The notes below the pieces were generated by a model that was given only the letters and a program-made list of their open reading frames with translations, made no database searches and had not been told where the DNA came from. Positions 43,556 through 46,600 of a DNA stretch of 64,000 nucleotides are shown here, one piece after another. A program made the translations under genes and the position numbers. Position 1 is the first letter of the stretch. Every line of letters starts with the position of its first letter. The DNA lies in NCBI GenBank assembly GCA_002269645.1, contig NIVC01001113.1:186001-250000 (forward strand), given 5' to 3'. The stretch comes from Macrostomum lignano (Eukaryota).

Positions 43556-43625
43556 ATAGGTTTTCTGTTAATTTCCTAATTACTGTACTAACTAATTAAA
43601 GCGGTACTATTTGCCGCATCTGCAG

Positions 43626-46600
43626 GGCTGGCTCAAGACCCTCTTGTTGGGCACGGGCGCCACGGCGACCGCCTCGGCGGCCGGCCTGGCTGTGTGGTAC
43701 CGCAGCCTCACCTCAGGCGAGCCGCTGCCACCGTCTCACTGGGCACGGCAGCCGATTCGCCAAATTGCCGGGCGTAGTCTGGACAATGACCTTCAGTTGA
43801 CCCTGTTCCAGTATCAGACCTGCCCGTTCTGCTGCAAAGTGCGCGCTTATTTAGACTATAGCGGTCTGGGCTACAATATTGTGGAGGTGAACTCCGTGTC
43901 CCGGCAGCAGATTCGTTGGATGAACGACTATCGGAAGGTTCCGGTGTTGTACGCGGCACCTGCGAACTCTTCGGCTAGCGGGGATGAGGTTCGTGCGCTG
44001 CGTTTTGAGTCTTTGTTTTCTTGTGCTCCTGGCGCCAATTTTGTGTGCCAGTTGGCGTCAAGTTGTTGGGTGTCAGTTGGCGCCAGTTTATCGGGTGTCA
44101 GTTGGCGCCAAGTTATCGGGTGTCAGTTGGCGCCAGTTTATCGGGTGTCAGTTGGCGCCAAGTTATCGGGTGTCAGTTGGCGCCAGTTTTTTGGGTGTCA
44201 GTTGACGCCAGTTTAAATTCGTGTCAGTTGGCCCCAGTTTATTAGGTATCAGTTGGTGCGAATTTTGGTTTTCAGCTGGCGCCAAGTTATTGGGTGTCAG
44301 CTGGTGCAAATTTTGGTTGTCAGTTGGCGCCAAGTTTTTGGGTGTCAGTTGGCGCCAGTTTATTGGGTGTCAGTTGACGCCAGTTTATTGGGTGTCAGTT
44401 GGCGCCAGTTTATTGGGTGTCAGTTGGCGCCAGTTTATTGGGTGTCAGTTGGCGCCAGTTTATTGGGTGTCAGTTGGCGCCAGTTTATTGGGTGTCAGTT
44501 GGCGCCAGTTTATTGGGTGTCAGTTGGCGCCAGTTTATTAGGTATCAGTTGGCGCGAATTTTGGTTGTCAGTTGGCGCTAAGTTTTTGGGTGTCAGTTGG
44601 CGCCAGTTTATTGGGTGTCAGTTGGCGCCAAATAATTGGGAATTTGGCGGTCATATCTAAGCTTGAGTTTATATTTGAAGTCTCTAATTTTTTGTCTGGC
44701 TTTCCTCAACTATGCAGGTGGTGCTCAAAGACTCATCTGTAATCATGAGCGCTCTGGAGAGTCGGATTCGCGATCCAAGCCAGTCGCTGGCGCAGCTGCG
44801 GCTGTGCTATCCCGGCATAGTGGGCGAGGAAGGCGGCAAGCTGACTTATCCTAATCGGTGAGTCATTTTAGTAGGGCCCTACCCAGTTTTTTTGGTAGGC
44901 CTCTGCCCGCTGGGGAAAGAAGAGGAAGGGGAGAAAAAGTAGATGGTAGACGTGGTAGAGAAAGTAGATAGCAGACAGGGGAGAGAAAGTAGATAACAGA
45001 CATGGTAGAGAAGTAGATAACAGAAGGGTAGAGAAGGTAGATAGCAGACAGGGTAGAGAAGTAGATAACAGACAGGGTAGAGAAGTAGATAACAGACAGG
45101 GTAGAGAAAGTAGATAGCAGATAGGGTAGAGAAGTAGATGACAGACATGGGAGAGTTAATAGAGGTTCAGCATCGCACCCTCACGCCGCCGCAGGTATTT
45201 CGTCATGCAGCCGGGTCAGAAACTTGACGAGTCGAAGCTACGCGAAGAGCAGAAGTGGCGCCAATGGGTAGACGATGTGTTCGTGCACACCATCTCGCCC
45301 AACATCTACCGCACCCTGCCGGAGGCTCTGGACAGCTTTCGCTGGTTTGACAAGGCGGGCGATTGGGAGAAATGCTTCACACCTGCGGAGCGAGCTCTGG
45401 TGATCTATACTGGTGAGTTTAGCTGCCTACCGTTTGACAGTCCTCTTCAGTAGCTCTTCTTGGTAGCTTCCACCCCCGAGATTCCAGGTTCCACCCCCGA
45501 GATTCCAGCTTCCACCCCAGAGATTCCAGCTTTCACCCCAGAGATTCCAGCTTTCACGCCAGAGATTCCAGCTTCCACCCCCGAGATTCCAGCTTCCACC
45601 CCAGAGATTCCAGCTTTCACCCCAGAGATTCCAGCTTCCACCCCCGAGATTCCAGCTTCCACCCCAGAGATTCCAGCTTCCACCCCAGAGATTCCAGCTT
45701 CCATCCCAAAGATTCCTGCTTCCACCCCAGAGATTCCAGCTTCCACCCCAGAGATTCCAGCTCTACTTCTCTACCCTGTCTGCTATCTACCTTCTCTACC
45801 CTGTCTGCTATCTACCTTCTCTACCCTGTCTGCTATCTACCTTCTCTACCCTGTCTGCTATCTACCTTCTCTACCCTGTCTGCTATCTACCTTCTCTACC
45901 CTGTCTGCTATCTACCTTCTCTACCCTGTCTGCTATCTACCTTCTCTGCCCTGTCTGCTATCTACCTTCTCTACCAAAGATTCCAGCTTCCACACTAGAG
46001 ATTCCAGCTTTCATACTAGAGATTCCAGCTTCCACACTAGAGATTCCAGCTTCCACCACCGGGATTCCAGCTTTTACCCCTGAGATTCCAGCTTCTACCC
46101 TAGAGATTCCAGCTTTTACCCCTGAGATTCCAGTTTCCACTTCAGAGATTCCAGCTCTACTTCTCTACCCTGTCTGCTATCTACCATCTCTACCCTGTCT
46201 GCTATCTACCATCTCTACCCTGTCTGCTATCTACCTTCTCTACCCTGTCTGCTATCTACCATCTCTACTCTGTCTGCTATCTACCTTCTCTACCAGAGAT
46301 TCCAGCTTCCAATCCTAAGAATATATCTTCCACCACCAAGTTTCTACCAGTAGCTCTTCCAATCCTGAGATTCCAGCTTCCACTTTGTTAGATTTTAGCT
46401 TCCGACCCCGAACTTCCAGCTTCCTGGCCCTAATATAAGTAAAGCATCCGTCATCTCCACCCCTCAGGCGCGGCCGTGATGCGCCTGGTATCCATGCGCC
46501 TGCGCTCCAAATACAATCTCCATCGCGACGTGCGCAAGTCGCTCTACAACGAGCTCGACGCTTTCTTACTTAACGGCGTCGGCAAGCGTCGCTTTCGCGG

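What the first reader, a model, noticed from the sequence alone, without database searches (positions are those of the whole stretch)
43600..43640. PTGES2 seems to have no start codon of its own: candidate for a spliced-leader-donated AUG
Seen: the first recognisable exon begins after ...CATCTGCAG (43625) with GGC TGG CTC AAG ACC CTC. It has no in-frame ATG until after the CPFC active site (WMNDY), and in-frame sequence upstream closes at a TAA near 43596. Established: flatworm spliced leaders end in AUG, which can serve as initiator Met. An SL joined at this phase-0 acceptor gives M-GWLKTLLLG..., a complete 344-aa protein with its N-terminal hydrophobic anchor. Inference: translation of this gene strictly depends on trans-splicing.
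Basis: partly seen in the sequence, partly recalled or inferred. Interest (0 to 1): 0.75.

Follow-up and report, generated by a model that had tools for sequence, protein, structure and literature searches.

The report
PTGES2 start codon supplied by spliced leader
This flatworm (Macrostomum lignano) prostaglandin E synthase 2 gene has no start codon of its own and most likely takes its AUG from the trans-spliced leader, which is a further example of a mechanism already known in flatworms.

Summary
The window is Macrostomum lignano Mlig_3_7 scaffold NIVC01001113.1. PTGES2 (GenBank PAA72102.1, flagged "partial") has four exons: 43626-43988, 44718-44857, 45195-45412 and 46468-46778. Exon 1 begins directly after a CTGCAG acceptor, which matches the published trans-splice motif [T/C]TNCAG. 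An in-frame TAA lies at 43593-95. The first in-frame ATG is at 43920, after the CPFC motif and inside the glutaredoxin/GST-N domain.

The M. lignano spliced leader (SL, 35 nt) ends in ATG. Joined at 43626 it gives M-GWLKTLLLG..., a 344-aa protein. The homeolog keeps the same ATG-less exon and the same acceptor, while the sequence just upstream carries indels that shift the frame. Four UniProt models begin at exon positions +1, +2 or +3, each in a different frame. The GenBank CDS begins 3 nt after the acceptor. PTGES2 and the upstream gene RTRAF are genes g3 and g2 of one transcriptional unit, in an annotation that cuts units at SL and poly(A) signals.

I could not obtain any read spanning the SL junction, so trans-splicing at this site and use of the SL AUG remain inferred (confidence about 0.8).

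SL-donated AUGs were shown in Schistosoma in 2006, with more than 40 cDNAs. This is therefore a new member of a known kind, of modest interest.

The parts
43620..43625 (+). Predicted SL trans-splice acceptor CTGCAG (AG at 43624-25)
   Evidence: It matches the published M. lignano trans-splice motif [T/C]TNCAG. The CAG is kept in the homeolog as CTACAG. Annotated mRNA/ORF starts coincide with it.
43626..43988 (+). PTGES2 exon 1: 121 codons in phase 0, with no initiator ATG. It encodes the N-terminal hydrophobic segment and the CPFC motif (43821-43832).
   Evidence: identical to PAA72102.1 from residue 2. PDB 1Z9H match E=1.4e-18. Pfam Glutaredoxin/GST_N_3.
43593..43595 (+). In-frame TAA that closes the reading frame 10 codons upstream of the acceptor
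43920..43922 (+). First in-frame ATG of the gene (codon 99, WMNDY). It lies after CPFC and inside the thioredoxin-fold domain.
44718..44857 (+). PTGES2 exon 2
45195..45412 (+). PTGES2 exon 3
46468..46778 (+). PTGES2 exon 4, including the TGA stop (46776-78)
42347..43625 (+). Outron / intercistronic spacer between the RTRAF stop and the PTGES2 acceptor. It is 1279 nt long, AT-rich (GC 0.17-0.43), and contains the RTRAF poly(A) signal AATAAA at 42426.
   Evidence: The homeolog shows about 13% divergence here, with indels that are not multiples of three.
43168..43554 (.). 55-nt x 7.1 tandem repeat inside the outron. Subtracting it leaves less than 1 kb between the genes.
   Evidence: The 1-kb repeat-adjusted operon criterion is in PMC8629364.
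41164..42346 (+). Upstream same-strand gene RTRAF (Pfam RLL), locus tag BOX15_Mlig012634g2. It is in the same transcriptional unit as PTGES2 (g3).
42728..42805 (+).
   Evidence: 38% GC. The homeolog has a 2-nt deletion inside it and a 2-nt deletion at the donor (GTGCGT to GTGTTT), so the last five codons are frameshifted. No gene model contains it.
42398..42421 (+). Second candidate cis exon: ATG CTT TCA AGC TAC TTT | GTAAGT (6 codons, phase 0, consensus donor). It sits in the RTRAF 3'UTR just before AATAAA.
   Evidence: It is retained in the homeolog (TTT to TTA), but no gene model uses it.

Best explanation
PTGES2 is the downstream gene of an RTRAF-PTGES2 transcriptional unit in Macrostomum lignano. 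The pre-mRNA is SL trans-spliced at the CTGCAG|G acceptor (exon start 43626), which removes the AT-rich outron. The 35-nt spliced leader (...TTATTGCATG) ends in AUG, and the junction is in phase 0. The mature mRNA therefore reads ...UUGC AUG GGC UGG CUC..., and the SL AUG, 32 nt from the cap, is the initiator. The product is a 344-aa membrane-anchored PTGES2 beginning M-GWLKTLLLG. The gene has no usable AUG of its own, so RNA that is not trans-spliced cannot make a functional enzyme. Shown here: the gene structure, the missing ATG, the phase, conservation in the homeolog, and transcript models that start at the acceptor. Inferred: that the SL is actually joined here, and that ribosomes start at its AUG.
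For: (1) Organism and SL. The window is identical to Mlig_3_7 contig NIVC01001113.1. The SL is CGGTCTCTTACTGCGAAGACTCAATTTATTGCATG, about 30% of genes are trans-spliced, and the acceptor motif is [T/C]TNCAG. (2) SL plus exon 1 translates as MGWLKTLLLG... with no stop. (3) The first internal in-frame ATG is codon 99, inside the Grx/GST_N domain and after CPFC. (4) Homeolog L001. The CDS has 28/1032 nt differences, 19 synonymous against 7 nonsynonymous codon changes, no indels, and the same ATG-less exon 1. The 60 nt upstream of the acceptor carry a 1-nt deletion, a roughly 30-nt insertion and about 16% mismatches. The in-frame CTG (43620) and TTG (43611) are lost and the CAG acceptor is kept. 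(5) UniProt models from the older assembly start at exon position +1 (P0001, P0003), +2 in frame 2 (P0002) and +3 in frame 3 (P0116). None includes even one upstream base, as expected if the evidence transcript stops aligning exactly at the acceptor. (6) GenBank 5'-partial CDSs begin 1-3 nt after TTCCAG/CTGCAG acceptors for three genes in this region, including PTGES2. (7) The locus tags are Mlig012634g2/g3 here and Mlig000683g1/g2 in the homeolog. '.gN' denotes genes cut out of one transcriptional unit at SL and poly(A) signals. (8) GC jumps from 0.30 or less to 0.63-0.77 exactly at 43626. (9) Precedent: in S. mansoni the SL AUG is in frame in 28% of trans-spliced transcripts, and more than 40 cDNAs need it. 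All flatworm SLs end in AUG, and the Macrostomum SL ATG has been noted as a start codon.
Against: No SL-containing read or cDNA for this junction could be retrieved. Most well-annotated PTGES2 orthologs have about 50-60 residues before the hydrophobic segment, so a missing N-terminal exon is not excluded by homology. One UniProt model (P0123) starts 24 nt upstream at 43602, and the homeolog's GenBank CDS starts at exon position +10. Neither sits exactly at the acceptor. A 6-codon ATG mini-exon with a consensus GTAAGT donor in phase 0 exists at 42398-42415 and is kept in the homeolog. The homeolog has a non-conserved in-frame ATG in its outron, at L001:9950.
Confidence: 0.8

Rival explanations
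1. A cis-spliced upstream coding exon supplies the ATG. Candidates are the reader's 42728-42805 exon, the 42398-42415 MLSSYF|GTAAGT mini-exon, or an unrecognised exon. Under this rival, 43626 is an ordinary internal acceptor.
For: 28 ATG-to-GT phase-0 candidates exist between RTRAF and the acceptor, and one has a consensus GTAAGT donor retained in the homeolog. Orthologs usually carry a longer N-terminus. Flatworm acceptors are often shared between cis- and trans-splicing.
Against: None of seven gene models from two assemblies and two homeologs contains an upstream exon or an ATG. Four models begin exactly at the acceptor. The upstream region is uniformly AT-rich, unlike the 61%-GC exons with 75% GC3. 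The GTAAGT mini-exon lies in the RTRAF 3'UTR, 52 nt after the RTRAF stop. Its ATG would therefore be far inside an RTRAF-containing RNA rather than near a cap.
Confidence: 0.08
2. Translation starts at a non-AUG codon, or at an outron codon on RNA that is not trans-spliced. Candidates are CUG 43620 and UUG 43611. A further variant uses an alternative acceptor, AAG|CGG at 43601/2, which would also put the SL AUG in frame and give MRYYLPHLQ-GWLK.
For: In-frame TTG and CTG lie between the TAA and the acceptor. UniProt A0A1I8G0N6 (P0123) begins at 43602, right after an AG.
Against: In the homeolog CTG becomes CTA, the TTG is destroyed, and a 1-nt deletion puts this stretch out of frame. These codons are therefore not under coding constraint. 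The 43602 variant still uses the SL AUG and so is a sub-case of the main explanation.
Confidence: 0.06
3. The protein starts at the first internal AUG (43920), or the locus is a decaying copy that makes no full-length enzyme.
For: This is the only in-frame ATG encoded in exon 1. The neighbouring RTRAF copy in this window carries a premature TAG. Six of the seven amino-acid differences between the homeologs fall in exon 1.
Against: Starting at Met100 would delete the membrane segment, CPFC and half of the Grx/GST_N domain. The first 47 codons are identical at protein level between the homeologs, with only synonymous changes. The whole CDS shows 19 synonymous against 7 nonsynonymous codon changes and no indels, while the flanks are indel-rich.
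Confidence: 0.04

Closest known systems
Schistosoma mansoni mRNAs whose initiator Met is the SL 3'-terminal AUG (Cheng, Cohen, Ndegwa & Davis 2006, J Biol Chem 281:733; summarised in PMC9851317 and PMC12582326)
   Same: The flatworm SL ends in AUG. The acceptor is in phase with the ORF. The recipient exon has no AUG of its own upstream of the essential sequence.
   Different: This case is in a free-living macrostomorph rather than a parasite. It has not been shown experimentally. The recipient is PTGES2, positioned as the downstream gene of an operon-like transcriptional unit. Two homeologs share the state.
slORFs: ORFs created by SL addition in nematodes, ascidians and trypanosomes (slORFfinder, PMC9851317)
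   Same: The start codon is contributed by the leader rather than by the gene.
   Different: Those cases mostly use near-cognate NUG codons and often create new or alternative ORFs. Here a canonical AUG starts the main, conserved ORF.
Downstream genes of SL-resolved operons (C. elegans SL2 genes; M. lignano operons, PMC8629364)
   Same: There is a same-strand upstream gene. The repeat-adjusted spacer is under 1 kb. The two genes share a transcriptional unit, and the 5' end is made by trans-splicing.
   Different: In nematodes the SL does not supply the AUG. Here the spacer is long (1.28 kb) because of a 387-nt tandem repeat.
Mammalian membrane-associated prostaglandin E synthase-2 (PDB 1Z9H/2PBJ)
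   Same: It has a Grx-like N-domain with CPFC, a GST-like fold and an N-terminal hydrophobic segment.
   Different: The mammalian and most invertebrate proteins have about 50-90 residues ahead of the hydrophobic segment. The M. lignano protein starts one residue before it.

Membership tests
SL-AUG-initiated trans-spliced mRNA (Cheng et al. 2006 class) | The organism's spliced leader ends in AUG | tested here: met
   The window is M. lignano. The published SL is ...TTATTGCATG. No SL RNA gene lies in the window itself.
SL-AUG-initiated trans-spliced mRNA (Cheng et al. 2006 class) | The mRNA is actually SL trans-spliced at this acceptor | tested here: inconclusive
   The evidence is indirect only. 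The acceptor fits [T/C]TNCAG. Four UniProt models start at exon positions +1, +2 or +3, and the GenBank CDS starts 3 nt after the AG. The gene is g3 of a transcriptional unit cut at SL/poly(A) signals. No junction read was retrievable.
SL-AUG-initiated trans-spliced mRNA (Cheng et al. 2006 class) | The SL AUG is in frame with the main ORF, with no intervening stop | tested here: met
   SL plus exon 1 gives MGWLKTLLLG..., 344 aa.
SL-AUG-initiated trans-spliced mRNA (Cheng et al. 2006 class) | The recipient has no in-frame AUG of its own upstream of essential sequence | tested here: met
   The first in-frame ATG is codon 99, after CPFC and inside the domain. The homeolog is the same.
SL-AUG-initiated trans-spliced mRNA (Cheng et al. 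2006 class) | No cis-spliced upstream coding exon | tested here: inconclusive
No gene model has one. A 6-codon ATG...|GTAAGT candidate at 42398-42415 cannot be excluded from sequence alone.
SL-AUG-initiated trans-spliced mRNA (Cheng et al. 2006 class) | The protein N-terminus derives from the SL Met | not testable with these tools
   This needs N-terminal proteomics or ribosome profiling.
PTGES2 (membrane-associated prostaglandin E synthase 2) | Grx/GST-N thioredoxin-fold domain with a CxxC (CPFC) motif, and orthology to PTGES2 | tested here: met
   Pfam GST_N_3, GST_N_2 and Glutaredoxin all score above their cut-offs. 1Z9H matches at E=1.4e-18. Identity to metazoan PTGES2 is 41-52% over more than 85% of the length.
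M. lignano operon (Ustyantsev & Berezikov 2021 criteria) | Adjacent same-strand genes, with the second trans-spliced and a repeat-adjusted distance under 1 kb | tested here: inconclusive
   The strand and the shared transcriptional-unit prefix are met. The distance is 1279 nt minus a 387-nt tandem repeat, about 890 nt. Trans-splicing of the second gene is inferred, not seen.

The most novel reading that the evidence does not exclude
The consensus donor GTAAGT (42416-21) lies in the RTRAF 3'UTR, 5 nt before the RTRAF poly(A) signal, and follows an ATG in phase 0. It may compete with the SL for the single PTGES2 acceptor. Trans-splicing would give a translatable SL-AUG-PTGES2 mRNA. Cis-splicing would give an RTRAF-PTGES2 fusion RNA in which PTGES2 is poorly translatable or untranslatable. 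PTGES2 output would then be set by a choice between cis- and trans-splicing, coupled to 3'-end formation of the upstream gene. This state would be fixed in both homeologs because the gene has lost its own AUG.
Probability: 0.1. Interest if true: 0.55.

Novelty: new member of a known kind. Interest (0 to 1): 0.3.

Why it matters
There are three points.

1. Annotation. GenBank labels this protein and its homeolog "partial", and UniProt lists Met-less fragments. With the SL AUG they are complete 344-aa proteins. Other "partial" M. lignano genes that start at [T/C]TNCAG acceptors may be complete for the same reason.

2. Practical work. M. lignano is the flatworm in which transgenesis is available. 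Reporter or rescue constructs built from such genes will need either trans-splicing or an added ATG.

3. Evolution. A conserved enzyme gene that has lost its own start codon cannot be expressed without trans-splicing. This illustrates how SL trans-splicing can become indispensable. It also ensures that unprocessed polycistronic RNA is not translated into this protein.

None of this changes current understanding, because the mechanism has been known since 2006.

Tried and rejected
1. Direct transcript evidence. Exact look-up of M+343 aa and of the 343-aa protein found nothing, and the 90% cluster holds only NCBI/UniRef entries. The COX17 and RTRAF clusters are the same, so M. lignano RNA-seq assemblies appear to be absent from the collection.
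2. A second homology search with exon 1 alone returned only distant fragments of 73% identity or less.
3. A scan of metagenome contigs for the SL-exon junction TTGCATGGGCTGGCTCAAGACCCTC gave 0 hits.
4. Literature and supplement searches for Mlig012634, Mlig000683 and PTGES2 found nothing. Cheng 2006 and Wasik 2015 are not held.
5. I tried using 'short' Logan orthologs (P0015, P0022, P0110) as evidence for a naturally short N-terminus. I rejected this because their contigs show that the calls start at TTG or internal codons, with open frame or a longer ORF upstream.
6. The SL RNA gene is not in the window.
8. GenBank CDS start coordinates are not exact trans-splice sites. The homeolog PTGES2 (+10) and RTRAF (QFH..., VRN...) starts do not sit at acceptors, so this line of evidence counts only as supportive.
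Full report
**What is there**

The window is Macrostomum lignano. A 23-kb stretch of GenBank assembly GCA_002269645.1 (Mlig_3_7), contig NIVC01001113.1, is base-for-base identical to window 33629-56778.

The finding lies at the 5' end of a four-exon gene on the + strand. The exons are 43626-43988, 44718-44857, 45195-45412 and 46468-46778, all with GT-AG introns. Its translation is identical from residue 2 onward to GenBank PAA72102.1 (BOX15_Mlig012634g3, "partial").

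The protein is a clear PTGES2:
- It is 41-52% identical to metazoan prostaglandin E synthase 2 over nearly its full length.
- It matches PDB 1Z9H at E=1.4e-18.
- It has Pfam Glutaredoxin/GST_N domains at residues 58-139 and a CPFC motif at 43821-43832.

**Checking the observation**

- Exon 1 follows ...CATCTGCAG, with the AG at 43624-25, and opens with GGC TGG CTC AAG.
- Reading upstream in frame, a TAA sits at 43593-95, and none of the 10 codons between it and the acceptor is ATG.
- The only in-frame ATG in exon 1 is at 43920 (codon 99). It lies after CPFC and in the middle of the thioredoxin-fold domain. The other two ATGs in the exon are out of frame.

**Can the spliced leader supply the AUG?**

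The M. lignano SL is a single 35-nt sequence, CGGTCTCTTACTGCGAAGACTCAATTTATTGCATG. About 30% of genes receive it, and the motif enriched at trans-splice acceptors is [T/C]TNCAG (PMC8629364). The site here, CTGCAG, fits that motif.

Joining the SL to 43626 gives ...UUGC-AUG-GGC-UGG..., which reads MGWLKTLLLGTGATATASAAGLAVWY... for 344 aa.

The published record supports the mechanism:
- All reported flatworm SLs end in AUG (PMC12582326).
- The terminal ATG of the Macrostomum SL has been noted as a translation start codon (PMC10468722).
[quoted passage not shown] 2006, as summarised in PMC9851317).

**Evidence that the mature mRNA begins at this acceptor**

I found no RNA reads, so this rests on three indirect lines.

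1. Older-assembly UniProt models. The models for this gene family begin at exon position +1 (A0A1I8G245 and P0003, "GWLK..."), at +2 in reading frame 2 (P0002, "AGSRPSCW...") and at +3 in frame 3 (P0116, "LAQDPP..."). If the underlying transcript alignment extended even one or two bases upstream, the frame-2 and frame-3 models would start with R or G. They do not. This is the pattern expected when the 5' part of the cDNA, the SL, does not align to the genome.

2. GenBank 5'-partial CDSs. In this region they begin 1-3 nt after TTCCAG or CTGCAG acceptors for three genes: the 259-aa gene at 34904, COX17 at 38862, and PTGES2 at 43629. A uniform +1 offset of the annotated 5' end would explain all three.

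3. Locus tags. RTRAF and PTGES2 are Mlig012634g2 and g3 here, and Mlig000683g1 and g2 in the homeolog. In this annotation, ".gN" genes are pieces cut from one transcriptional unit by the TBONE pipeline at SL and poly(A) signals (Wudarski et al. 2017, text and Suppl. Fig. 5a).

The RTRAF stop is 1279 nt upstream of the acceptor. Of that, 387 nt is a 55-nt tandem repeat. The repeat-adjusted spacer is therefore under the 1-kb operon threshold used for this species.

**The homeolog as a natural experiment**

M. lignano carries a recent genome duplication. The second copy (L001, contig NIVC01000012.1) has the same COX17-RTRAF-PTGES2 order.

Across the CDS the two copies differ at 28 of 1032 nt. There are 19 synonymous and 7 nonsynonymous codon changes and no indels. 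The homeolog's exon 1 also starts GGC TGG with no ATG.

Constraint stops exactly at the acceptor. The 60 nt upstream carry a 1-nt deletion, a roughly 30-nt (TTTAA)n insertion and about 16% mismatches. The in-frame CTG (43620) becomes CTA, the TTG (43611) is destroyed, and the CAG acceptor is kept. GC content also jumps at 43626, from 0.30 or less to 0.63-0.77.

**Alternatives**

It is 38% GC, against 61% for the CDS. In the homeolog it has a 2-nt deletion inside it and another at the donor (GTGCGT to GTGTTT), which frameshifts the last five codons. It is very unlikely to be coding.
- Other upstream exons. My enumeration found 28 ATG-to-GT phase-0 candidates. Only one has a consensus donor: ATG CTT TCA AGC TAC TTT|GTAAGT at 42398-42415. 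It lies in the RTRAF 3'UTR just before AATAAA (42426) and is retained in the homeolog. No gene model uses it, and its ATG would lie deep inside an RTRAF-containing RNA. Sequence alone cannot exclude it.
- Non-AUG initiation in the outron. The homeolog argues against this, as described above.
- Initiation at Met100. This would remove the anchor and the active site.

Three caveats remain:
- Most orthologs have about 50-60 residues before the hydrophobic segment. The apparently short Logan orthologs turned out to be truncated gene calls.
- One UniProt model starts at 43602, after an AAG. That could be a second, in-phase acceptor in this copy only.
- The homeolog has acquired a non-conserved in-frame ATG in its outron.

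**Verdict**

I give about 0.8 to trans-splicing at 43626 with the SL AUG as the initiator.

It is a new example, in a free-living flatworm and in a gene annotated as "partial", of a mechanism established for schistosomes in 2006. It is not a new kind of system. Its main value is for annotation and construct design in M. lignano, and as a tidy case of a gene that has become dependent on trans-splicing.

A simple search of existing RNA-seq data for the junction ...TTATTGCATG|GGCTGGCTC would settle it.

Noticed in passing
window 41452-41454: The RTRAF (RLL) copy in this window has TAG where the homeolog has CAG (...AVSL*FGD against ...AVSLQFGD). GenBank accordingly splits the gene into pieces, with g2 starting at 41500, and one UniProt model skips the codon. 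This is either a nonsense mutation in one homeolog or an assembly error.
   Followed up: partly
window 38855-38930 (COX17, acceptor TTCCAG|C at 38860/61): For COX17 the SL AUG would be out of frame. It would open a 23-codon uORF (MQKRETKQ...) that overlaps the gene's own ATGs (38883, 38904). The arrangement is the same in the homeolog. This contrasts with PTGES2 and shows that the SL AUG is not always benign.
   Followed up: partly
window 41121-41166 (RTRAF 5' end): UniProt A0A1I8G1B5 starts at ACC 41128, right after CTGTCAG. An SL joined there would be in frame and add 13 residues (MTRRHPAHRTALS) ahead of RTRAF's own ATG at 41164. The homeolog has a 2-nt indel in this stretch, so the extension is not conserved.
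   Followed up: partly
window 42398-42431: A consensus 5' splice site, GTAAGT, sits 5 nt upstream of the RTRAF poly(A) signal AATAAA. It is preceded by a 6-codon ATG ORF in phase 0 relative to the PTGES2 acceptor, and it is retained in the homeolog. It could mediate cis-splicing to 43626 or influence polyadenylation.
   Followed up: partly
L001 9947-9991: In the homeolog, a 1-nt deletion shifts the outron frame so that TAA ATG ... (14 codons) ... CAG|GGC is open. This gives an in-frame ATG 42 nt upstream of exon 1 that is absent from the window copy.
   Followed up: partly
window 43599-43602: UniProt A0A1I8G0N6 begins at CGG 43602, directly after TTAAAG. This is a possible alternative acceptor that is also in phase 0 in this copy (MRYYLPHLQGWLK...), but it is out of frame in the homeolog.
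   Followed up: partly
L001 10001 (homeolog PTGES2 CDS start): GenBank PAA94312.1 starts at Lys (exon position +10), not at the acceptor. Similarly, RTRAF PAA94313.1 starts at QFH..., two codons after its own ATG. These 5' ends are unexplained.
   Followed up: no
window 43168-43554, 44030-44630, ~44930-45155, ~45460-46160, ~46860-47770, 48430-49990, 39220-41100: The locus is packed with minisatellites in the outron, the introns and the 3' flank. Examples are a 55-nt x 7 repeat, a 25-nt x 24 repeat and GC-rich units of about 30 nt. They generate long spurious ORFs in several frames on both strands.
   Followed up: no
window 34902-37743: A 259-aa gene, also annotated as 5'-partial, starts 2 nt after a TTTTCCAG acceptor. 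Its own ATG (MLSSSDPLVLALVALMVLAGSQAQ..., which looks like a signal peptide) is 21 codons in. The SL AUG would be out of frame and would stop after 4 codons. Its first 100 residues have no Pfam hit.
   Followed up: partly
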